From Ascidiella aspersa (Eukaryota): a DNA stretch of 64,000 nucleotides. Shown here one piece after another: positions 2,600-55,958 of the stretch; position 1 is the stretch's first letter; each line of letters starts with the position of its first letter. Made by a program: the position numbers and the translations under genes. The DNA lies in assembly GCA_963924565.1 (NCBI GenBank), contig OZ004607.1, positions 35,898,001 to 35,962,000 of the forward strand, read 5' to 3'. The notes beneath the pieces were generated by a model. The model searched no databases, was not told the origin of the DNA, and saw nothing but the letters and a program-made list of their open reading frames with translations.

Positions 2600-4614
2600 G
2601 CTTAATCCAATCTGGCCTCTTTTAACCGCTTCAGTTCGTCAGCAGTAGTTCACAGCTCCACTATAACATTCCCTATATCCGCGCGTTGGCCTGTTCTGGT
2701 GCTGTAGGTTTGCGCGCAGGATTAAACAGCTCTCCAAACGACGAGAAAGGCCTCCTGAGCGAGAAATAGGAAAGCGTGACGTCATAGGTAACAGTGCAAA
2801 GGTTCCGGTGGCAGCTCGCGTCGCGCCTTTTTAAATTGCGCAGTCGATTTCGCCTAGCGTTTGAAAAAATGCAGCAGCAGTAGCGACGTTGGATAAGTTT
2901 GAAATGCTGCATAAGTTTATATGGTCCGGGTCTACACAGTTGTTTATGGGTTAGGCAAATTTGTACGTACACAATGCTGGTAAAACCTATTCTATTGCGG
3001 TAAGTTTAATCTTTCCTCGAGGTAAATTTGCATATTGGCGACTTAAGTCTATTTTAAGCGCGTTTAATTATTTCATGCAGGAAACTGCCTAAAATCGGGG
3101 GGGGGGGGGGGGGCATTTCAATACCCAAGAAAAGAATCCAGTTTAATCTTTTAACGTTTAGAATCTCCGAAACTATTTGAGATATCCATCTGAAATTTAC
3201 ACACAACTTTCATAGCAACATAATCTGTTTAACAATTTCCACGTTTTAAAAATCAATTAAACGGCTTTCTAAAAGCACCTTTTTCCGTGTAGAGGTTGCC
3301 AAACCAGTCTGGTATTCAGGATAAAAAGTATTCTTGAATAACATTTAGCACTAGGGCGATAACTATTTGACCTAAAAAAATACAAAATTGACCTGATCTA
3401 AAGATACTTTTTTTTACAATATTTTGACCTAACGTTGACAAATTTTGACATTTTTGCCACGTTAAAAAATACTCGCTCTACTTATCTACATTGAAGCTGG
3501 TGTCACCACTTAGATTTACTAAATCAAACCAACTCCCCGATTCAAATGCACTCGCGTAGCATTAAACAAGCAACAAAATGTCATATACTGATTTCAGAAA
3601 CACTATGTAAGCAGTCAAAATCGCCAAAACAACAACAATTGCTTTCGCTGTCTCTCTTCTTGACACAATGCTTACGCGAAAGGATAGCCTCGGCTGGCCT
3701 AACAACAACTCTACTGCCATGTGACTACAGGAAACGACGAAAGCGGGCACGTGTGTAGATGCTAGCTCTTAGACTTACTACATTTCTTTTTGTTTTCGTA
3801 AATTAGATTAGAATTAGAATTGCCAGATGCTTTAAAAACAAAATTGATAAAATGATTACAATTTTAATCATGTACAATCAATTTAATTTAATGTCAATTT
3901 ATTCTCATAAGAATGTGAATGGTTAAGTGTCCATTTTTAACTAGATTAAGACGAACTCAAGTATTTGCGGAACAAATTAATTCAAAGTAAAAATATAACA
4001 ACGAATAGCAGGTAAATTTTCTGCAATCGTTAGCAACCAGCCCAGATCAGATCTTTTATAGTCGTGTCTTAAATCTAAAAGACAACACGTAAATTCCTCG
4101 AATACAAAATTACAAAGTATCACAGAACTAATATCGACAAAGGCGTAAAAGCGGCTGTCCACCCAATAAAATAATCGTATTAAACAGTCGCAAAAAATCT
4201 CATCTGCAAAACAGAAGCAGCTCGATTTTTCACATGTTGCGTGTTGCTCATTGATATGCGTAAAAACTCCAGTTATCTAACCTTTCCAACGAGAAACATA
4301 AATGATGTGTATTAAATTGCTTTAGTGAGAATTTTATGGCAAAGACGGCTAATTAGGTATCTTACAAGTTCCTTGTAGGTTCCGGACTCCAAAGAACATG
4401 CCGATAAAATACCTGTCCTTTACTTCAAGTAACGTAAAGTTAGGCAATATGGGGGCTATCAGACAAACAAATAACTTCCAAAAGCTACACTGCTATCCAA
4501 AATCGGTACAAATACTTATCAATAACAGCACGAGATAGATTCGGCTTTCCAAAAGCACCCGATTTGCTTGCGGTTCATTTTTGGTAAAAGATTAATAGGA
4601 CCTTTGTCGCAAAA

Positions 4615-9548: not shown

Positions 9549-12500
9549 CTGCGGAAGCGACAAAAGAAGGAAAGCGATGATTGGGGAGCAGCAGCATGAG
9601 AGGGAAGAATTTCGTTTGTATGGGTGAGGGGCATAGGCGCCGAACGTGCAGACCGACTCTATAACCGAGGTCATAGAGTCCCCAAACTATGTTTTTTGAT
9701 GTTTTATGTAATTTATTTTCAATTTTTTGTTAGGCTAACGTTTTGGCCATTTCATTGTAAACTTTTTTAGCCTAAATGTGCGAAAATAAAGATATAAAGG
9801 GGAAATGGTTGGCTCAGTGATAACAGGCAACAGCTGTTATCTAAGAGGCCATATTTAATATCTAGTTAATAAGCAATTTTGCAATGTCTAAAAAATAACG
9901 CCCTGGAATTGTAAATGTTCGGCGCCTATGGCGAGGTGGCATCGTTTGAGAAGCACTTGCGGTAAGCAATTTGTATTGTCGTTTTCATTGCGGTACAAGG
10001 GCGGGTTATCGGGGTGCGTGAGAGGACACTGCTAAATAAGTGCGCTATATCTTTGTGCGTGAGTGTGTTTAACGTATGTTTCTATATGTCCGTGGGTTGC
10101 AGCGCACAGAATTTGTTCTAAAGGCATAATGCCATTCAAGATTATCATAAAGCAAGTGAGTTTATGTCGGAATTAAAAGGGCGGAATTTAACACCAAATA
10201 AAAAAATACTTTTCATGTTTGGTTACACTATGCACGTATCTGTAATGTAGCTTGATAATAAATTGCAAAGCCAAAAAGGTCGAGTAGATCGACATCATCT
10301 TGATTAGGACGTTTCGATTATAAGTGATGCTTGTATCATCTTCAGTAAATAAATATCAACTAAAGATGATTCAAGCTCGTATCGAAACGTCTCAATCAAG
10401 ACGATGTCGATCTACTCGACCTTTTTGGCTTTGTAATTCATCATCAAGCTTCTTTTCATTTTGTTATCACACGTCCTTTTGGATCACCAAGCAAGGCACA
10501 AATTAGCGGCACACAGATTGCTGACAATGCGGTCGGATTACGAGCGAATAAGAGGAAACAAAGGTAGCAGTTGAAGCTTTTGCTTGCAAAAAAGCAACTT
10601 GACAAACAATTCTCAGGCGCGATCTCATTTATTTGACAGTAAAGCGCGTATAGGCAGATTTAACTTTGTTTTAAGCTTAAAACTCTATCAAATAGTTGCG
10701 ATAGTGCATCTAAACGCAACAGGCTTCATTTTGGCACTAAAATGTTGGGCCCAATTTTGGGTTTACTGTATAGATTACAGAAGCACTGCACGCACGTTGT
10801 ACGTGATCTGGCTATGGTGTTGGCTTGTCAGCACACCGGCAGAATTAAAGGCGCATCGTAGCAGCAAAAATGACTGTTTTATGCCAAGTGCTGATCAGCA
10901 AGCAAACGCAATATCCTGGCCGCTATGCCACCTCCGCTTTTGTAAGCAATGTACTAAACCCGATGTAATAAACTGCCTCCAGACTGCCTGAAATGCAGCC
11001 AGAAAAGAGAGATCAAGTATTTTGATCACTGTGGGTAGGGCCATATGGGTTTGTCTCAAGGTAAAAGTCGTCTTTTATCTTTTACCAAGGGAAAATCAAA
11101 TAGCACACCCGGGGCTTTGTACATAGCTAAGCAAAGCAGCGGCGGCAGCAACTACGTACAATATAGTGTTTTTATTTCAACAAAAATACGCGTTTTATTA
11201 TATATATTATATCAGTGATATCCGATACAGCGCATTATATTCCGATACCCGATATTTTTGTGCGATAAAAATAAGAGAGACTTGTTACTTTGATCATGTA
11301 ATCGGAATTTGAAAAATTAAAAAGTACAAAGGTAAAGTTTTCCGGGTGATTAGAAAAAAAATTATTTAACTTTAGAAAGCTCAGTTTATCTTCAACTGTG
11401 AACAATATTTCAAAGTAGAAATTTTTGTGTTGGTTTAAAAAACTTGGCTGAAATGAATCAACACAGATCGGTTCCGACAATACCCAACTATCGGACGAGT
11501 ACCGATATTATTACTTGTCGGGTATCGGTCACGATCCAAAAATTATCGGACATCTCTAGTGTTCAGCTTAGCGCAATGCTTTTGAACTTACTGTTGAGCG
11601 AAATGCAGTTTGCTGTGTTGCACCGTTCCGCTCCACGCGGCTTTTCTTCAGCGTCGCACAACGAGCTATACCTTCCTTCCTCGTCCAGACATTGGACATT
11701 GCGAGATCTGGAGCCGCCTCCGCACGAAACAGAACACTGCGTGAAAAAATGAGGTGAATGAGTTACTGTATAATGGCCTACACTGAGCGAATTCCAAGAA
11801 TTTAAAAGAAAAGGTCGTTCTCTGTTGTTAATCATTGGTTAAGCGAGGGAGTACACCAAAATTGAAAAAAGAATCACAGGCAGCGTCAAAATCACGCATT
11901 AACGTGTAATAATAGTGTACAAAGGTGCTCTAACAAATGTAGAGCAGTGCTCAGAGTTCCATGTAACCATATTGTTGCACTGATTTCTTTCATAAAACGG
12001 TGTTTGCTAACTAATTGAAGAAAGCCTCGAAAGACCAAGAACATATAATCGAATAAATGCGACAATGCAAATGTATAAACAAGAATATTGGTATAAAATG
12101 CGGTACTTTATCCGCGCCACTCATGCTATAATAGAAACGCATATTGGCCAAGCCAACAACACAGTATCACCACAAAAACACACAAAAGAACTAAAAAAAA
12201 CTCAGAGCCGGGGTTCGAACCCGCGACCTTGCGCTTACCTCGGTCCACTGAGTGTGGTACCATCGCGATCCGCACGATTGCGTGTTGCAGGGCTGTTCAG
12301 TTGCAAGCTTGGTGTGTTCGTCGCAAGGTACACGTCCGTTCTCTTCCGACTGCATTACGGACGTTACGGATCCGTCAGGCTCGACGCGTACGCAGACGAC
12401 GGAACGTGTTTGACGCCCGGCGCCGCATTTGCTTGAACACTGCAAAGTTGATAAAAGTGTGATTTTTCTGGCTCTTCTTGGCAATACACCGAAGTTAGGT

Positions 12501-15500
12501 AGATAGATTTGAATTTATTTCGTAACAACGGTATATACAATTATACATGCAGAAATTTAAATGTAAAATAAAAAAAGAAGCATCCGTAGTCAGCTGCCCC
12601 TGGCTGTGATTCAATTTGTGGTAAGCATTTTTTTGCAAATGATAATTAAGCAACACTATATACGGATCTGTTCATAAGTGTAATGGTGAAAATAACGGCC
12701 CAAATAGACATCAAAAGCGACATGCTTTATTATTCAAACGTTTCGGCAAATGATCACTGATGATGGCATGAGCATTTGCCGAAACGTTTGAATAATAAAG
12801 CATGTCGCTTTTTATGTCTATTTGGGCCGTTATTTTCACCACAATTGAGCAAGGTCTCTAAGTTTCGTTGTAGTATTTTTGTTTAAATAATAAAACAAGA
12901 AAAATGATTTGTATAACTTACAATTTAAACTGTTTACCTGGTTCGCTTGTTTGCTTACTCAATTTGGTTAAAAGCAACGTGATATTTTGTTTGCGTTTTT
13001 TGTGCTGCCTCTTGTATCACACACATACCAGTTGAACGAGTCCCTAACGACTCTATGTGATTTCGGTGCTTATTAAACGGCTTCAGTCTCAGTTTATTTT
13101 ATTTTTGTGCAACTAGAGGACATTGAAAACATAAAAATAACATGTACACAGCGAAAAAACCTAACTGCCATCGAGTCAATTGCCCTAACAAAATAAACAA
13201 GCGTCATTGCCAACTTTGCAGCACTGAAAACGAAATGTTCGCTCGCCGAAAACCAGCAATTGTTGTGCACTGCATCAAACTGAAGGCGCTGTTTGCTTCA
13301 ATAACAACTTAACAACTTTTCCATTGCCTTAATCAAAATCGCACGGAAGCGTTTGGTTCCGGCTACAAGATTTTTGAACTATATTTAGCCGAGAGTTGCG
13401 TTCGGGGCTGGCGTAGTTTAATTTAATACAAATACAGTTTGCGAGTCGAGAATTGTTTGACTGACTCTATGTAACGACTCTATGTAATTTCAGTGTTTAT
13501 TAAACGGTTTCAGTATCAGTTTATTTTATTTTTGTGTAACTAGAGGACATTGAAAACATAAAAATAACATGTAGACAGCGAAAAAACCTTCGGTCATTGA
13601 GCCAAGTCGCCCAAACAGATCAAACAAGGGTCATTGTGCCAACTTTGCAGCGCTGAAAGTTCGAACACTGAAAACCAGCAGTTGTTTTGCTGTACAAGAA
13701 TGCAAACTGAAGATGCTATTTGCCCCCAAAACAACTGTTCCATTGCCTTATACAAACCCCGTCACGGAAGCGTTTGGTTCCGGCTACAAGATTTTTGAAC
13801 TATATTTAGCCGAAAGCCGCATTCGGGGCTGGCGCAGTTTAACTTACGTACAATACAAATACAGTTTGCGAGTCGAGGATCTTTTGGCTGCTTTTTATCG
13901 CGCGAAAAAGGGCGCTTGGCGAAAACACGCGAAGTTACGCGAATCGCGCGTTCGATTTCGGGCCCAGGAAGCCAAATTGCCGGTAAGATGGCTCGGGTGG
14001 CGCGATTATTGCAGAAAACAGGAAGCGATTTTCGGTAATGGCATCGATGGCACGCGAAAGAAGACATGCGCCCGAGTAAAAAAGCCATTTTCGGCCACGT
14101 TTTTGCGCCTTTTTCGGACCCTATGGTCTATTTTAAGAGAAGGCTTTTTTGGCGACCAAGGCGGAAAAATGTGGAGGAAAGGTAAGGTATAAGCTAAATA
14201 TTGGTCCAGGTAAAGTCTGATTTTGGTTGGGGTTGTGTCACACTTAAATAACCGCTTGACACTAAAGTTACGCCATAAATTATTTAAACCCCTTATTTTA
14301 ATCAAATATCAAGCATACTATTAATTTAATTTACAGGCAAGATTTAACATACTTCATTAATTTTTTTGGATTGGTTTACTCTTCTACTATATAATACGTT
14401 AAAGCCAGATCCATTTTTGAAAACAAAGTACACAACAATACTGAAGCCACTAAACCACAAAAAACATTTATCAATAGAATCGCAATTACGAAAAAATAAC
14501 CCTAATAATAAATCAACTATACATAAACTATAGGCGGTTTTTCGTTAAACTCATTGCTTTTCAAAATTATTTTTATTTTTAAACTATTCACAAAGATTTC
14601 AATCAGGCCTTTATGACTCCCCCTCCAAAATAAATAGTCCACGTCACCCCAAGGGGCAACGGACCCCAGATTAACAATTACTGGTTTAGAGGGTCCCAAA
14701 CAGGGTTGGGCAACATACAACGACGGGATCGTGCGATTAGAAGATCGCCTTACACGCGATGTCTTTCCCCTAATCGCATTAGCAAGGTAAATCGGACCCG
14801 AACCCCGATTTAGGGACAGGTGAAGGCCGAATTGAAAGGCTTTGATGCCGCGTTGAGGGAGAAAACCACTGCCTTACCGCAGGGAATTTGAGGCATTTGT
14901 GGTGGAGGTGTGTTTTTGTAGGCAAAGGGCGTGGTAATCGAAGGGGAGAGTGTAAGAAACGGGATTATCGAAGTATTTTGGACGCTGATTAGTTTTTTAG
15001 GATGCAAGAAAATTCCACAGTAGTTGTTTGGTGGTCGCTAAGAACTTCACAAAAAACATTTTAAGACAATGTAAAATAATACAGAGAGTGTCCATAGTCA
15101 CAAAAAGGGTTCACAAGGCTTCATAAATTTCATTAAAGAAGCATTTAGGTCAACCTAAACGCAACTTACAGGAACTATTATTACGTTTCCTCAGCTGAGC
15201 GCATATTGGAAGTTATGTACTGTTTTGTTCAACAGAATACTATAGCAAAGCTAGCAACTTAGGTCAGACACAATTAAAAAATCTTAATTTTTATATCTTT
15301 TAAGATTTTTTTAGTGGTCCCTATCTTGCAAGGAGTAAGGCGATTTCTATTATCACATATTCAGTGCAATATTTTTTGTACAACGCATCTTTATACATTT
15401 GTTTAATCGAAGTTATAAAAGATCACACGGTTTCCAGCATAAAACCCGCAGGTGTGTTTAAATTGGCCCCAAATAAAGAAAAACAACCGTTTTGGTTGCC

Positions 15501-18500
15501 GCCCGCCAAGACAAAAGGCCACCACCACATAAGGGTCCAGCTATTCGCGGGCACGCCCTGCTAGCAGCAAGATAGGCACGTAAATAAACCTCAGGCGACT
15601 AGAGATATGTCAGGCCGCAGGTAGCGATCAAACAAGAGCTTAGTTGGACAAGTCAAACCGAAAGTATCTCGCGTCGCCCGATTTCCCTTTCAAGTACTTC
15701 CAACTATTTTTAGCCGCATTACAGAGCCGCGATTTGGAGGGCGTTGTCTGTCGTGCGGATTTATTACGGTTCAGCTCACTTTTGCACTATCAAGGAGTTA
15801 CATATAGGCAAAGCAAACTTAAGCTGTTCGTCTGAATTGCGTTTACGTAAAGGGTAAGACAAACAACGGAGGTGATCATTTGCAAAACAAATTTCTGCCT
15901 GTAATTTCACTCTCTAAAAAATAACGCTTTATGGCAAGTGCTTAATCCCCAAAATTGAATCAGAAGAGCCAATGAAAAAAATGCTTTTAAAACAGAAAAC
16001 GTAGCCTCAAAACATGTTTGATAGCTTTGGGTTTCCGCTTCTTAATACTGGTAATGCTTCCTAATACAATTGTTTGTGTATGATTAGAGTGAATTAAAAA
16101 ACGTAAAATTTCCCTTTATTTCGCACAGTTATGTGTGTTGTTTCAATTTGGTATGTCATTCGCCCTGATGAAGGCGGCTTGTATAGGTTGCCGAAATGTT
16201 GGTTAACAATTACAATTACCAGAGGAGCTGTTTTTGATTTATATTGGTATGTCGTGTTCCTAGAGGAACGCATTTGACAAAAACACAAGGTTGCCGTGAC
16301 CTATTCGTTTTCTCTGCAAAATGCAGGTACCAAAAAATTTAAACCACCGCCTTAGCGTTTGTGGTTGGTGGGGTAAAAGCGGAATGCGGCCGCGTCTCGA
16401 GATATTTGATGTTTGTCAGCGACCAGTTATTTGCCGAAACTCGAGAAGTTTCGAACCGAAAAACCGAACCTTTGTTTGCTGTGCTAATCCCAACGACAAA
16501 CTACTCTTTTTCTTGGCAATTTTTCCCACGCGGCTTCGTACCTGGTATAGCAAGTGTCGCGAACCAAAGCTTCTTTACCCAAGCATAAAAGTCAGGCTGC
16601 GAACTCGCGGTGGCACAGCAGCCGCAAACTCTCGCAGTAGCGCCCAGACTACTATAGTTACCACTGTACACCTACCGCAGAGGCCCCGCGCGCATCTAAA
16701 CAAACCCTAGACACCCCTTAGCCCGCCGTTGGGTCCAAAGAGTGACCCCCATATACGCCAGCAGTTACCCAGAGTCCCGCCCAGACGGCTAAGTGTCGAC
16801 GCTCGCGACAGCCAAACCCTTTGAAGCGGCTTTGGTGGCCCACGAAGTCGATACACACGGCCAACTTATAAAGGGCAAGATTTATTTTTTACACGCAATT
16901 TAATATTTGTTTGTTGTTGTAGTTTCTCCGTATAATTCAATAGACAACCTTTACTGTGCTTAGTTTTTTCTACAAATTCGTTAACGTTAAGACTTAATTG
17001 AAAAATCCAAGCTCTACTTTTATAAAACTACTTTGATTTTAACATATTTTAGACTAGTTTAAAAAAATTAAAAAATCGCTTCTGGGTTAGCTTTTCATGC
17101 AACAACTTTCTGCCTAGGTTTTTATGCAACTTATTAACCGTTTCCTACTTCGTGGTCAATTTTTAATAGCGCCTTCCTTTAAAAAAAACGCGTAAGTATA
17201 TCAGCAAAAAATAGGCTATATTTGAAAAGCGAGTCCTCTTTTTTTCAAGGCCTGGCCCTTTTTGTGGCGAGATAATTGGCCGGATAATTTCGCTTCAAAA
17301 ACGTGAGAAGCGCGGCGTCGATACACAAACCCCAACAGGGGCGATATCCCCTTACTGATTTTAACCCCGCGGTTTTGGGTCGAAGGGGGTAATGGGGTTA
17401 AGGGGTACGTGGGAGAGAGTGTAATGCGAGAAATCGTAGGGTAACAGTTATACGCAGCATATGAGGCCGTTACGTAATAAAGCAACAAATACCGGGTTTA
17501 AGGACTGATGCTAATCCGCTGAACGCAAAGTGAATAGTCAAACGTTAGTTTAATTTTTTTGTAGCATTCAACTGAAATAAATAACGTTAAATTGCGACAA
17601 AAAAATAAAAAAAAACTAAAATTAAATTTAATAAACCCTTTTATACGTCTGTAACACCTCATGGGATATTTGCATCATTTCGGCGTTTCAAAAATTACGC
17701 CTCCTGTAATTCATTACAAGCCTTTTATGGAACATTCAGATTTGTGATTTTGGGGAAGCAATTTTAGATACTGAAAAGCACGTAGTGAAAACAATTAACT
17801 TGTCATTTTATCTGCACCGATTGCGAATTAAACCTTGATTAAAGTGATTACTGTTTGAAGTTTGGTTGAATTTGTGGTTTTCGAGAATCGGGCAAATCAA
17901 AACGCTCTTCTTGTAGCAAAATTAAAAAATACAAATGTCCGAAATTGTCCGAAAATAGTCAAGCGACGCACTTTAACCGAAACTAAACAAAAAAGGATAC
18001 GAGCTTCTATCATCATCAGTTGATGTGACTGAGAATCAATTCAAGTATCACTTATAAAAGGTGACACCGCTGTAACTGTTCAACACCTGAAGGTGCTAAA
18101 TAATGAATAACTATGGAAACTTAGACTGATAACAATTGCGTCCCACCTTTAATAAGTGATGCTTGAATTGTTTCTCAGTCACACTAACTGAAGATGATAC
18201 AAGTTCGTATCGAAACGTCTTAATTAAAACGATGTCGTTCTACCTGATAATTTGGGCTTTGCAATTCATTATCAAGCGCAATTACAGATCCGTACATAGT
18301 GTACCCAACTAAAAAAAGAAAACAAAAAAAGCGAAACTTACCGTTCCCCAGTCACCGGCAAACCACTCGTACTTGACTCCACACGAAGATCGAGCACACG
18401 ATCGTGTTTCGTGGGGTCTGTGATGAGCTGGGCAACCTGCTGAAGATTGCGCCGTATTGAGGCAGTGGACGCTCCTACGCTGGACGCCGCGGTCGCAGTC

Positions 18501-27500: not shown

Positions 27501-30500
27501 ACACGTGTATACAAGGGGCCGTGTTAAACATAGAAGCGGCCAAGTTGTTGTTGCTATTACCTTGCAAACTTTTGCGACTGATATGCGCGAGTTGGGCTGG
27601 TCAACTGTAGAAATATGTGACCAATGTTGTGAACGAGTCATTTTGAAACGACTTAAGTCGCGGTCATGTCATTTGCAATAAATAACCAGTCAATTTGCAG
27701 TCCAAGTCAAGTCATTTGCAACCTATAACCAGTCAATTTGCAGTCCAAGTCAAGTCATTTGCAACCTATAACCAGTCAATTTGCAGTCCAAGTCAAGTCA
27801 TTTGCAACCTATAACCAGTCAATTCGCAGTCCAAGTCAAGTCATTTGCAACCTATAACCAGTCAATTCGCAGTCCAAGTCAAGTCATTTGCAACCTATAA
27901 CCAGTCAATTTGCAATCCAAGTGAATCATTTACCATGTTAAGTTCTTGACGTAAAAATTAAACATTAATTTAATAAAATTGGTAAACTCGTCCGTGTGTG
28001 AGCAACATCTTAACTAAAAAAAACAAAACATTTAAAGCGATATATTAGAATTCTGCGAAGACTTTAATAATATTGCCCAAAAACGTAAAACTCTTTTTAA
28101 CAGTAATTGAATTCAATTTATCACATTGCAATAGCGGAACGGCCTTTCACCTGTATCTATAATCAGAAAAACTTTAACGGCTCATTGAAATGCAAATGTA
28201 TATACTCTACTTTGCTGTCGCCTAACAAACACATGGAAACATGTTGTGCCCGACCTGCATGCCGCAGTCGCACGTCACAGAAATTTGCGGCTACGACCAA
28301 CACGACGTAATCGACGTATGTGCTGACGCGCAAAAACCTGTCGGACCGACGTGATTTTGCACAAGGTTGAAAGACCCGATATCGAGTTTGACGGTTGCGC
28401 GGTTGTGGATAAACAGCATACTTGTTATCTGCGGTAGTGTCAACATTGGGAATTAGTAGGGAAAACCGTTGGCTCCATAACGGTACTTAGGGCTGAAGCA
28501 GTTTGGTATCAGATAAATACCGCTGATTTTTTAATTTGCATTTTTGAAGAAAAACTGGCCTTGAGATATGCTTTGACAGCCGGCGCGCAATTAATAGTTT
28601 CTTTGTGTTTTATTTGGAATTGCTTGTACCTAACAAATATCAGCGATAGGTAAAAGGCCAAAGAAAAGCTGCTTTAAATCTAGTTTTAGTTTGACCACAT
28701 ACTCTAGTCCAAGGGTTCTCCAATTTTTTTTCTTCGCGGACCCCATAAAAATTTTTGCTTCGCATGGGCTAGTGTAGGCAAGAATTTTAAGAGATGACGT
28801 CATAAATTTAAGTCATTATACAAATAAACTCCAGAAATCTGCTACTTCCGGTCCGAAAAATGTGAAAGTGAAATAAAGTTTAAATAATTTAGCGCATAAA
28901 CCTTTCATTATTGATTAAACTTTTTTAAACTTTGATTCCTTCTTAAAGATACAATAATATTTCAATTTTGCCTTCATGGATCACTAAAACTAGTTCACGT
29001 ACCCCCAAGAGGACCATAGACCCCAGTTTAAGAAACCCTGATCTAGTCCAACTCCTGAGAAACACGTATTTTATCGCAGCGACCAAAGGTGGGCAACTAT
29101 ATAGATCATTGCCTCGAGTCTTCGAAATACCCTGAATGCCCGATAAGACACGCACATATTCCCCGACTGGAGTACATTCAAGCGCAAAGTGTCAATGTCG
29201 CGATGTTTACCAAACCACTGCCAGCGAAGATTGCAATGTTTGACGACACCGTTTTGACCTTGGAGGGAGATATTGCTTCCCCAATAGAATGTCGTGTAGC
29301 TATGTAGCCCGTCGGTCAGTAACCCCTGTATCTGGTAGTTGGTGGTATAGCGTGGACGGGTTGGCATTCACGGGTACTTTTGTAATTAAGATTGATTTTT
29401 TATTTTATTTTTTTCGGGGGGAAGGTGTGTGGAAAACTCGGGCAATAAAAAAATACGTTTTTTCCCTAAAAACTGCTGATGCCTTATTTTGTGACGCAAT
29501 ACATTTCTCTGGGGAACATATAAATGAATGACTTTGAATGAGACAAGAAAATCTAAAGAATATACAACTTTCATTGTCCACATTTACGTGTAAGGGCGAG
29601 GAGATTTCTTCTCTTTTTACATTTAGTTTGGCATGGCAAAAAACACGATGATTTTGAGACTGCATGGCGTAACACGGCTAGTCGGCTAGGGTTGGAAAAC
29701 TATTTGGAGACAAAGCAAGGTTGTCTTACAGATTTAATTGCAGGCGACTTTTACTTTAAAGAACACTCCTTCCTAGACTTTGATTCATTTATTCGATCGG
29801 TTACCAACAAGTTTACAATTTCGTAGACATAAGTCGGAAAACGCAGAACACACTAAAAGTCAATCAAGTGAATTCGTTCTTACGCTCAATAAGGTTCCCA
29901 TCTAACGAGCAATAAGAAGAAAAACGAATGCGGAAAATTGGCCAGCAGATGTAGGCCAGGTGGTGTGACCCCAAGGCTGTATTTCTCCTTTTGTTATCGC
30001 ATCTCACCTAACGTGGCTAACCGGAAAACGTTCAAACTCGCATTATAGATTTGATAAGGGTTTCGGCGGTTGGATTGCAAGCGTGTGTTATAACACCTGG
30101 TGAAACTGTTAGAAACGTCTTTTGTGGCATAGGCGCCAAATACCAAACAGATAAGGGACAAATGCGCTATACACTAAATGTCTCGTGAAGAATTACGAAA
30201 CTAAAACAGAAAGATAATGAATTGCAAAGCAAAAAGGTCGAGTATAGGTCGGCATCATCTTGATTAAGACGTTTCGATACGAGCTTGTATCATCTTCATT
30301 TAATGTGACTGAGAAGCAATTCAAGCATCACTTACAAAAGGTGGGACGCAATTGTTATCAGTCTGAGTTACTATAGTTGAAGCTCAAGCTACTTTACAGA
30401 TCCGTGCATAGTGTAGCCAAAAACGAAGCTCGTCCGATTTATTTTCAAGCAACGATGTACAGCTTTCACATGAAGGCACGCTTTCTTTCGCTCATATTTT

Positions 30501-53211: not shown

Positions 53212-53368
53212 TACACTATGCACGGGTCTGTAATGTAGCTTGATAATGAATTGCAAAGCCAAAAAGGTCGAGTAGATCGACATCATCTTGATTAAGACGT
53301 TTCGATAGGAACTTATCGTCTTAAGTTAATGTCTACTCGATCTTTTTGGCTTTGCAATTCATTATCAA
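53212..53368. mobile_element. Family A repeat, internally deleted palindrome
   Basis: tacactatgcacgggtctgtaatgtagcttgataatgaattgcaaagcc... followed by inverted ...ggctttgcaattcattatcaa. Confidence 0.8.
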
Positions 53369-55770: not shown

Positions 55771-55958
55771 TACACTATATGCATGGATTAATAATGTAAA
55801 ATTTGGCTTCGCAATTCATTGTCAAGCTATATTACAGATCGGTGCATAGTGTACCGAAGTTGGTTTCCATTACGGTAAGCATTCAAGCTTCAATTACGAA
55901 AGCTGGAACGTCTGCATTTCAAATCTTTGGCTTTGCAATTCATTATCAAGCAACATTA
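55771..55958. mobile_element. Family A remnants (both termini plus a second arm fragment)
   Basis: tacactat...atagtgta at 55771-55853; tttggctttgcaattcattatcaagc at about 55926-55951. Confidence 0.7.

What the first reader, a model, noticed from the sequence alone, without database searches (positions are those of the whole stretch)
12653..12841. Second hammerhead family (B) shares a positionally conserved 3' tail with family A
Seen: an intact core CTGATGA-tggca..tgcc-GAAACGTT (12757-12788) sits at the centre of a near-perfect hairpin with arms of about 72 bp, and its stem II sequence differs from family A. On the inverted arm, ACAGATCCGT(A/G)(T/C)ATAGTGT follows 65 nt after the cleavage triplet, versus about 64 nt in family A; atgtcg and tttgg also fall at matching offsets. 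Inference: a conserved core with replaced stems plus a conserved tail suggests selection on both the ribozyme and a cis-acting terminal signal, such as an RT recognition or priming site.
Basis: partly seen in the sequence, partly recalled or inferred. Interest (0 to 1): 0.8.

Follow-up and report, generated by a model that had tools for sequence, protein, structure and literature searches.

The report
Truncated Penelope-like retroelement foldback insertion
This is an ordinary dead copy of a Penelope-like retrotransposon: two head-to-head partial copies carrying a minimal hammerhead ribozyme, whose "conserved tail" is the element's known ~30-nt end piece, lying in the first codons of its own gene where reverse transcription starts.

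Summary
The arms 12684-12756 and 12769-12841 are 73 nt long and 97% complementary. An intact minimal hammerhead sits at 12757-12788 on the + strand. The 19-nt motif lies at 12653-12671 on the - strand, 65 nt after the cleavage triplet, against 64 nt in family A.

The locus is one 188-bp insertion of an endonuclease-encoding Penelope-like element (PLE) flanked by an ~11-bp target-site duplication. It consists of a sense copy truncated inside the hammerhead and an inverted copy that carries the intact hammerhead but lacks the last ~31 nt.

Families A, B and a third family, C (intact 848-aa RT plus GIY-YIG ORF), are sister PLE lineages. In C the order is ORF stop, pLTR, hammerhead, start codon, motif.

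- About 95% of sampled insertions end 4-6 nt after the motif.
- Inverted arms always stop just before the motif (31 of 31).

The motif is therefore the published PLE "tail" between two cDNA start sites. It ends about 88 nt after the ribozyme cut, as in Anolis PAc (85-92 nt).

The RT-priming reading is partly supported, because coding constraint is a confound. First-stage notes on other windows of this genome flagged the same kind of element, and none had been followed up.

The parts
12642..12652 (.). Target-site duplication, copy next to the tail-bearing end (ATAATTAAGCA).
   Evidence: It matches 12841-12851 at 9 of 11 positions (read). Other copies of the family have clean 11-16 bp duplications (L002, L006, L009, L017, L020).
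12653..12752 (-). Sense copy of PLE family B, 5'-truncated inside hammerhead loop II. It runs from CATTTGCC-GAAACGTT to the insertion 3' end and lacks the CUGAUGA box.
   Evidence: Alignment to 10 other family B copies. It breaks from the family sequence exactly at CATTTG.
12653..12671 (-). The 19-nt conserved motif, which is the core of the PLE 'tail'. It lies in frame with the ORF and reads (N)RSVYSV. This copy ends directly after it, 4 nt short of the usual ...TCCA end.
   Evidence: About 95% of 48 sampled motif copies end 4-6 nt after the motif.
12721..12723 (-).
   Evidence: The frame ATG TCG ... AGA TCC GTA TAT AGT GTT is open. The homologous frame in family C continues for 823 codons.
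12737..12752 (-). 3' half of the hammerhead on the sense arm (stem II 3' strand, GAAAC, GTT). The nominal cleavage site lies between 12737 and 12736, 65 nt before the motif.
12753..12840 (+). Inverted copy of family B. It starts 4 nt before CUGAUGA and stops about 52 nt after the cleavage site, so it lacks the last ~31 nt (the tail).
   Evidence: In 31 of 31 foldback copies the inverted arm stops 0-23 nt upstream of the motif and never contains it.
12757..12788 (+). Intact minimal, helix-III-less hammerhead: CUGAUGA, an extra U, stem II GGCA/UGCC, GAAA, and ACGU followed by U at the cleavage position.
   Evidence: It meets the four min-HHR hallmarks of PMC4209133.
12803..12805 (+). Start codon of the ORF remnant on the inverted arm.
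12841..12851 (.). Target-site duplication, second copy (ACAATTGAGCA).
   Evidence: It matches 12642-12652 at 9 of 11 positions.

Best explanation
Window 12653-12840 is one dead-on-arrival insertion of an endonuclease-encoding Penelope-like retrotransposon, family B.

What is shown:
- In this element group the ORF stop is followed by 100-260 nt of pseudo-LTR, then a minimal dimer-type hammerhead, then the start codon of the next tandem unit 13-20 nt after the cleavage site.
- Insertions end about 88 nt after the cleavage site, inside the ORF, 4-6 nt past the 19-nt motif.
[quoted passage not shown] That copy ends about 31 nt earlier, just before the motif.
- A, B and C share the tail by common descent.

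What is inferred:
- The two ends are two internal initiation sites of target-primed reverse transcription, one used on each DNA strand, as measured in vitro for Anolis PAc.
- The motif is kept both as RNA (part of the RT binding or initiation signal) and as protein (RSVxSVPK).
- Copies that end at the motif lack the downstream part of the binding region. They cannot move again unless they lie in tandem.
For: PLE identity:
- Family B copy L005 and family A copy L019 carry a GIY-YIG C-terminus (..PELNVD..PLYLFN*) 100-200 nt upstream of the hammerhead. L019 also has the YVDD RT motif.

Tail in the ORF:
- In C the frame runs from the start codon through NRSVFSVPKYVGNHYG.. for 823 codons.
- In A and B the rare extended copies read SVPKYIG(I/N)HYG in frame.

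Insertion ends:
- 20 of 20 and about 18 of 20 sampled copies end at ..GTGTACCCA (A) or ..GTGTTCCA (B).
- Most of about 130 family C hits cover only residues 1-26/28.
- Only 6 of 1073 exact motif copies read on to CAYTAYGG.
- Contigs from independent public runs break at both boundaries, L011 positions 3077/3078 and 3110.

Foldbacks: 31 of 48 copies have an inverted arm, and 0 of 31 arms include the motif.

Target-site duplications of 11-16 bp and variable 5' truncation are present.

Conservation: motif 17/19 in all three family pairs, against 25-29 of 52 between the start codon and the motif.

Literature:
- Inverted 5'-truncated copy and a 30-40 bp tail at one end only (PMC8557442).
- Two internal RT start sites bounding the tail, the hammerhead cut 26 nt into the ORF and RT start at 111-118 nt, that is 85-92 nt after the cut (PMC11167929).
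- Min-HHR hallmarks (PMC4209133).
Against: - No full-length family A or B copy with the 5' ORF was recovered.
- The cis-acting role is not separated from coding constraint. Val and Pro codons in and next to the motif vary synonymously between families. Windows of 17/19 identity also occur in 0.4-2.9% of ORF positions.
- A fourth related family, D, lacks the motif.
- Self-cleavage is untested. Helix I of B is only about 3 bp, and thermodynamic cofolding did not recover the dimeric hammerhead.
- No RNA ends could be read, because all available runs are contigs.
Confidence: 0.8

Rival explanations
1. The motif is conserved only because it encodes a needed N-terminal peptide (RSVxSVPKY.G.HYG). Its position next to the insertion end is set by other RNA features, so it is not itself an RT signal.
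For: The motif is in frame in all three families. The third positions of the Val and Pro codons differ between A, B and C, while the amino acids are kept or are conservative (H/Y/F). The conserved peptide continues past the insertion end (PKY(I/V)G.HYG). Equally conserved 19-nt windows exist in the RT core. Family D keeps PK...HYG but not the motif.
Against: The three six-fold-degenerate codons (AGA, TCC, AGT) are invariant in all families. The 17 codons just upstream are poorly conserved (about 50% nt). Both cDNA ends bracket the motif within a few nt in three families. For PAc the protein-binding region was mapped to this part of the RNA.
Confidence: 0.3
2. Family B short copies are a separate non-autonomous element (an animal non-LTR retrozyme or a SINE-like parasite) that borrowed the 3' end of an autonomous PLE to be recognised by its RT.
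For: Most copies are only about 100-130 nt, running from the hammerhead to the tail. Their 5' ends cluster 4-8 nt before CUGAUGA. A 2026 preprint derives animal retrozymes from PLE pLTRs.
Against: Longer B copies run continuously from the EN coding sequence through the pLTR into the hammerhead and tail (L005, L053, L011). No tandem 170-400 nt units are present at this locus. Short copies are equally explained as 5'-truncated cDNAs, or as cDNAs of a pLTR-initiated transcript.
Confidence: 0.1
3. The element is a DNA transposon or MITE with terminal inverted repeats, and the hairpin is its functional form.
For: It has near-perfect inverted arms and a flanking duplication. In one family A copy (30396) the motif follows an inverted body.
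Against: The two ends are not symmetrical: the tail is on one end only in 31 of 31 copies. Arm lengths and junctions differ from copy to copy. Duplications vary from 11 to 16 bp. Copies grade into RT/EN-coding elements.
Confidence: 0.02
4. The hairpin is a small-RNA (miRNA-like) gene.
For: The fold energy is -120 kcal/mol. Several plant and animal miRNA precursor models match below their thresholds.
Against: All Rfam matches are far below their gathering scores and occur on both strands, which is typical of any long inverted repeat. The arms are copies of a dispersed retroelement.
Confidence: 0.02

Closest known systems
PAc, a Poseidon-clade Penelope-like element of Anolis carolinensis (Frangieh et al. 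2024, PMC11167929)
   Same: The hammerhead overlaps the ORF start. Reverse transcription starts inside the ORF at two nearby sites that bound the ~30-40 nt 'tail'. The main start is 85-92 nt after the ribozyme cut, against about 87-88 nt here. In family C the frame is open from AUGs inside CUGAUGAUGG, which puts the cut at +29 and the main end at about +117, against +26 and +111-118 in PAc. Both DNA strands are cut and extended, which fits head-to-head insertions.
   Different: The host is different: a marine animal, as far as can be told from the marine and seawater metagenome runs that hold the repeat. There is no sequence similarity in the tail. In A and B the ORF starts after the cut site, not inside the ribozyme. 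Nothing here is biochemically tested. A rare third, more distal end is seen.
Minimal hammerheads of PLE pseudo-LTRs (Cervera and de la Pena 2014, PMC4209133)
   Same: The CUGANGA...GAAA core has no helix III hairpin. [quoted passage not shown] Families within one genome differ by compensatory stem changes. Paired motifs occur on opposite strands 100-700 bp apart. A U3-A8 covariant core is seen in family D.
   Different: Helix I of family B is very short (about 3 bp). Activity is unknown.
General PLE insertion architecture (Craig et al. 2021, PMC8557442; Evgen'ev and Arkhipova 2005 as cited there)
   Same: 5' truncation, partial tandems forming pLTRs, an adjacent inverted 5'-truncated copy, and a 30-40 bp tail at one end only.
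   Different: None in kind. This report adds that the tail sequence is shared almost unchanged by three families of one genome and lies in coding sequence.
Animal non-LTR retrozymes (Cervera and de la Pena 2020, cited in PMC8557442; Li et al. 2026 preprint 10.64898/2026.07.22.740005)
   Same: Short hammerhead-bearing repeats related to PLE pLTRs.
   Different: Retrozymes are tandem 170-400 nt units that give circular RNAs. This locus is a single foldback with a target-site duplication.
LINE/SINE pairs that share a 3' tail recognised by the LINE RT (own knowledge: stringent-type LINEs such as UnaL2/UnaSINE1)
   Same: A short conserved 3' segment is shared between otherwise diverged retroelements and is the RT entry point.
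   Different: Here the shared segment is internal to the ORF of the autonomous element, and initiation is internal rather than at the RNA 3' end.

Membership tests
Endonuclease-encoding Penelope-like elements (canonical, C-terminal EN) | A single ORF with a reverse transcriptase domain followed by a C-terminal GIY-YIG endonuclease. | tested here: met
   Family C ORF: RVT_1 at E 1.5e-9 and GIY-YIG at 25.9 bits against a cut-off of 22.6. Family A copy L019 has YVDD plus an EN C-terminus, and family B copies L005 and L053 have an EN C-terminus directly upstream of the hammerhead. This was not shown for the window copy itself, which is non-coding.
Endonuclease-encoding Penelope-like elements (canonical, C-terminal EN) | Partial tandem arrangement giving pseudo-LTRs. 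| tested here: met
   L047 has the order hammerhead, ORF, hammerhead with a tail copy after each. L050 is a 2671-bp tandem array of family D.
Endonuclease-encoding Penelope-like elements (canonical, C-terminal EN) | Frequent 5' truncation, an adjacent inverted 5'-truncated copy, and a 30-40 bp tail at one end only. | tested here: met
   31 of 48 copies have an inverted arm. The tail of about 24-31 nt is present on one arm only in 31 of 31. The window copy shows exactly this.
Endonuclease-encoding Penelope-like elements (canonical, C-terminal EN) | Clade assignment (Penelope/Poseidon, Neptune or Nematis) by RT phylogeny and the linker Zn-finger motif. | not tested
   No reference PLE proteins were fetched, and the costly protein search was not spent on this. 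The nearest ESM Atlas clusters are RVT_1/HTH_animal/GIY-YIG proteins of arthropods and flatworms.
Minimal PLE hammerhead (min-HHR, PMC4209133) | CUGANGA and GAAA boxes flanking a stem II hairpin, with a cleavage triplet after ACGU and no helix III hairpin. | tested here: met
   12757-12788 on the + strand.
Minimal PLE hammerhead (min-HHR, PMC4209133) | [quoted passage not shown] | tested here: met
   U at 12764, G12765 paired with C12780, and C12785/G12786 within ACGU. The same holds in A and C. The features are as listed.
Minimal PLE hammerhead (min-HHR, PMC4209133) | Compensatory changes in the stems between families. | tested here: met
   Stem II is GAUAC/GUAUC in A, GGCA/UGCC in B and C, and GAAUAA/UUAUUC in D.
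Minimal PLE hammerhead (min-HHR, PMC4209133) | Self-cleavage, as a dimer. | not testable with these tools
   Cofolding did not recover the dimer, and only contigs were available, so no RNA ends could be read.
Rfam hammerhead families (types I, II, III, HH9, HH10) | A match to a curated covariance model. | tested here: not met
   No hammerhead model matched even at E up to 10. This is expected for a motif without helix III.
Animal non-LTR retrozymes | Head-to-tail tandem units of 170-400 nt, each with a hammerhead. | tested here: not met
   No direct repeat of that kind lies around 12300-13200. The copy is a foldback with a target-site duplication.

The most novel reading that the evidence does not exclude
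The ~31-nt tail is a true cis-acting initiation module shared by at least three PLE families of this genome, which would allow cross-mobilisation. It would be held at a fixed distance (about 88 nt) from the hammerhead cut site from lizards to this marine invertebrate. The hammerhead plus the following ~90 nt would then form one structured RNA unit that positions the RT. The two start sites would be strand-specific: the distal site for the sense cDNA and the proximal site for the inverted cDNA.
Probability: 0.35. Interest if true: 0.55.

Novelty: new member of a known kind. Interest (0 to 1): 0.3.

Why it matters
The feature itself is ordinary. It is a dead Penelope-like element copy with the published hallmarks: a minimal hammerhead, an inverted 5'-truncated partner and a one-sided tail.

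Its value is as genomic corroboration of a mechanism so far shown in vitro for only one lizard element. Hundreds of insertions from three families mark the same two internal cDNA ends, at the same distance from the ribozyme. The segment between those ends is the most conserved non-catalytic stretch of the pLTR-ORF junction.

This gives a concrete, mutable candidate for the PLE reverse-transcriptase initiation signal. It also gives a practical rule for annotating such foldbacks, which otherwise look like MITEs or hairpin RNA genes.

Tried and rejected
- Rfam. There were no matches at gathering thresholds over the whole window. At E up to 10 on 12600-12900, only sub-threshold miRNA-like hairpin matches appeared on both strands, and no hammerhead model matched.
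- TIR/MITE idea. It was raised by the window 30396 copy, where the motif follows an inverted body. I rejected it after seeing one-sided tails, variable junctions and RT/EN-coding long copies.
- GIY-YIG Pfam search of the genome. It found other PLE families without this motif and did not help in finding A or B masters.
- Window 55834 copy. I translated downstream of it hoping for a continuing ORF. There is none. It is a copy with a ~25-nt extension followed by unrelated sequence.
- Full-length A and B copies. I replaced it with pattern searches that print the match.
- RNA evidence. All runs that hold the repeat are kept as contigs, and none is on record as RNA. No molecule starts or ends could be read. 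The contigs confirm only the two element boundaries and foldback joints.
- RNAcofold of two hammerhead monomers. It gave a different dimer and did not recover the intermolecular helix III, so it is uninformative.
- Consensus sequences. No full-length consensus or repaired frame was built. Majority letters were computed only for the 136-column hammerhead-to-tail alignment, to measure identity.
Full report
**Observation**

The repeat finder gives inverted arms 12684-12756 and 12769-12841, 73 nt long, 97% complementary and 12 nt apart. The + strand carries CTGATGA-T-GGCA-(8 nt)-TGCC-GAAAC-GTT at 12757-12788. The - strand carries ACAGATCCGTATATAGTGT at 12653-12671. The window holds six matches to the degenerate motif, against none in 100 shuffles. 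Rfam has no match at gathering thresholds anywhere in the window.

One correction is needed. The intact hammerhead belongs to the + strand arm, which has no tail. The tail-bearing - strand arm begins inside loop II (CATTTGCC-GAAACGTT...) and has no CUGAUGA box.

The window's genome is 308.6 Mb in 75 contigs.

- It has 1073 exact motif copies and no hits to the reversed control.
- Of these, 425 have an exact GAAACGTH 50-80 nt upstream.
- 363 of those 425 (85%) have a gap of 63-66 nt.

I fetched 20 of the copies that lack an exact GAAACGTH. Six have a point-mutated GAAAC at the same spacing. The others are truncated or folded back downstream of the ribozyme. All but one or two end right after the motif. 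The refutation condition (a motif mostly without a hammerhead, or at random spacing) is therefore not met.

**What the elements are**

Forty fetched copies show variable 5' truncation. They have a fixed 3' end...ATAGTGTACCCA in family A and ...ATAGTGTTCCA in family B. They also have 11-16 bp target-site duplications, for example in L002, L006, L009, L017 and L020. These are the marks of target-primed reverse transcription.

Longer copies run upstream into coding sequence.

- L005 (family B) ends an ORF with ..LLESISIQRYKPELNVDFKSVPLYLFN*.
- L019 (family A) ends with ..PELNVDTLSTPLYLFNT* and has a YVDD RT motif further up.
- A search with the A C-terminus found more than 150 related loci in several families, including intact frames of 816-880 aa.

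These are canonical endonuclease-encoding Penelope-like elements (PLEs).

**Where the tail lies**

In family C the order is: ORF stop, about 260 nt of pseudo-LTR, hammerhead (CTGATGA-T-GGCA..TGCC-GAAACGTT), 13 nt, ATG, then 17 codons. The motif follows as AAC AGA TCC GTG TTT AGT GTT CCT AAG, and the ORF then runs on for about 800 codons.

The same frame is open in the other two families. A reads MMSIYSTFLALQFIIKLHYRSVHSVP and B reads MSLFMSIWAVIFTIKLMNRSVYSVP.

Only 6 of the 1073 exact motif copies read on. They continue in frame as SVPKYIG(I/N)HYG. At least the two examined (window 55834 and L059) stop about 25 nt later, at CCATTAC(GG). Among the family C hits, most cover only residues 1-26/28 of the protein.

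The normal 3' end of an insertion therefore lies inside the ORF, 87-88 nt after the cleavage site.

**The hairpin**

Of 48 motif-bearing copies, 31 have an inverted copy of the same element joined at their 5' end. In all 31 the inverted arm stops 0-23 nt upstream of the motif (mostly 1-13 nt) and never includes it.

Contigs from independent public runs laid on a long B copy break at both boundaries, with 46 contigs at L011 3077/3078 and 20 at 3110 in run X1. They also show opposite-strand joints near the hammerhead.

The window copy is one such pair.

- The sense arm is 12752 to 12653 on the - strand.
- The inverted arm is 12753 to 12840 on the + strand.
- The flanks are ATAATTAAGCA and ACAATTGAGCA, which match at 9 of 11 positions.

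This is the architecture described for PLEs in general: an inverted 5'-truncated copy adjacent to the unit, and a 30-40 bp tail present at one end only (PMC8557442).

**Mechanism**

For the Anolis element PAc, purified protein cuts and extends both DNA strands. It starts reverse transcription at two adjacent internal sites of the RNA that bound the genomic tail. The hammerhead cut is 26 nt into the ORF and the main start is 111-118 nt into it, which is 85-92 nt after the cut. The protein-binding region maps within the first 172 nt of the ORF (PMC11167929).

The elements here have the same geometry. The main end is 87-88 nt after the cut and a second end lies about 31 nt upstream. In family C the frame is even open from the AUGs inside CUGAUGAUGG, which places the cut at +29 and the main end near +117.

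Insertions lack everything 3' of the start site. Solo copies like this one should therefore be unable to move again, which fits the known need of PLEs for more-than-unit copies (stated in PMC4209133).

The 5' ends of short copies cluster 4-8 nt before CUGANGA, about 31 nt after a TATATAAA box in the B pseudo-LTR. This may be the pLTR transcription start. That point is inference only.

**Is the tail a cis-acting signal?**

Identity between the families is as follows.

| Segment | Identity between families |
|---|---|
| Catalytic boxes | 7-8 of 8 |
| Stem II and loop, A against B or C (pairing kept) | 7 of 16 |
| Start codon to motif | 25-29 of 52 |
| Motif | 17 of 19 in every pair |

The motif is thus as conserved as the catalytic core, and it is bracketed by both cDNA ends.

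It is also coding sequence. The two variable stretches are a synonymous Val position and an H/Y/F codon. The neighbouring Val and Pro codons vary synonymously, while AGA, TCC and AGT never do. Windows of 17/19 identity occur in 0.4-2.9% of positions elsewhere in the ORF. Family D, which has a U3-A8 covariant hammerhead, keeps PK...HYG but not the motif.

The data favour a dual constraint but do not prove an RNA role. I put that part at roughly 55-60%, and the PLE-insertion reading at more than 90%.

**The ribozyme**

The family B motif meets the four hallmarks of PLE minimal hammerheads (read):

- a G10.1-C11.1 pair;
- palindromic 15.2-16.2;
- compensatory stem changes between families.

It has no helix III, so no Rfam hammerhead model matches. 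Helix I of B is only about 3 bp. Cofolding did not recover the dimer. At this locus any transcript would fold into a -120 kcal/mol hairpin. The ribozyme here is a fossil.

**Comparison and novelty**

Every structural feature is already described for PLEs. The families themselves are, as far as I could check, simply further members.

Two things go modestly beyond the papers I read. The tail is nearly identical in three otherwise diverged families of one genome and lies in the first codons of the ORF. And the distance from the ribozyme cut to the main cDNA start matches that of a lizard element.

First-stage notes on other windows of this genome had already flagged hammerhead foldbacks with the tail outward. 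None had been followed up.

**Limits**

- The clade within PLEs was not determined.
- A and B masters were not recovered.
- No RNA-level evidence was obtainable.

Noticed in passing
window 10225-10420 (-), 18188-18307 (+), 30230-30420 (+), 53213-53310 (-): Four family A PLE copies. The copy at 10225 is a foldback with hammerheads on both arms, one of them mutated to CTAAAGA. The copy at 18188 is a longer sense copy with pLTR sequence upstream. The copy at 30396 is almost all inverted arm, joined to only about 12-30 nt of sense arm plus the tail.
   Followed up: partly
window 55834-55880 (+); also L059: A family A copy that reads about 25 nt beyond the usual 3' end, as far as CCATTACGG, in frame (PK.VG.HYG with a small deletion). 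This is a rare third, more distal end. Only 6 of 1073 exact motif copies in the genome show it.
   Followed up: partly
L047 (G000:C3:20854500-20863000, - strand) and L046 (C7): Family C PLE with two intact ORFs that are 100% identical over the first 120 residues (848 and 880 aa open frames), in partial tandem. It is probably recently active. Its frame is open through the hammerhead itself.
   Followed up: partly
L048, L049, L050 (G000:C3, C4, C9; a tandem array of period 2671 bp on C9): Family D PLE with a U3-A8 covariant hammerhead core (TTGAAAA..GAAACGTC) and 816-843 aa ORFs. It lacks the ACAGATCCGT motif. The last unit of the C9 array ends only about 43 nt after the cut site.
   Followed up: partly
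L011, L009, L005 (family B pseudo-LTR): A TATATAAA box lies about 31 nt upstream of the point where many short B copies begin (ATATCACTGATGA). This may be the pLTR promoter and transcription start.
   Followed up: no
(public runs): The family B repeat is held by runs of two coded organisms and by seawater and marine metagenome runs, so the host is probably a marine animal. No run on record as RNA holds it.
   Followed up: no
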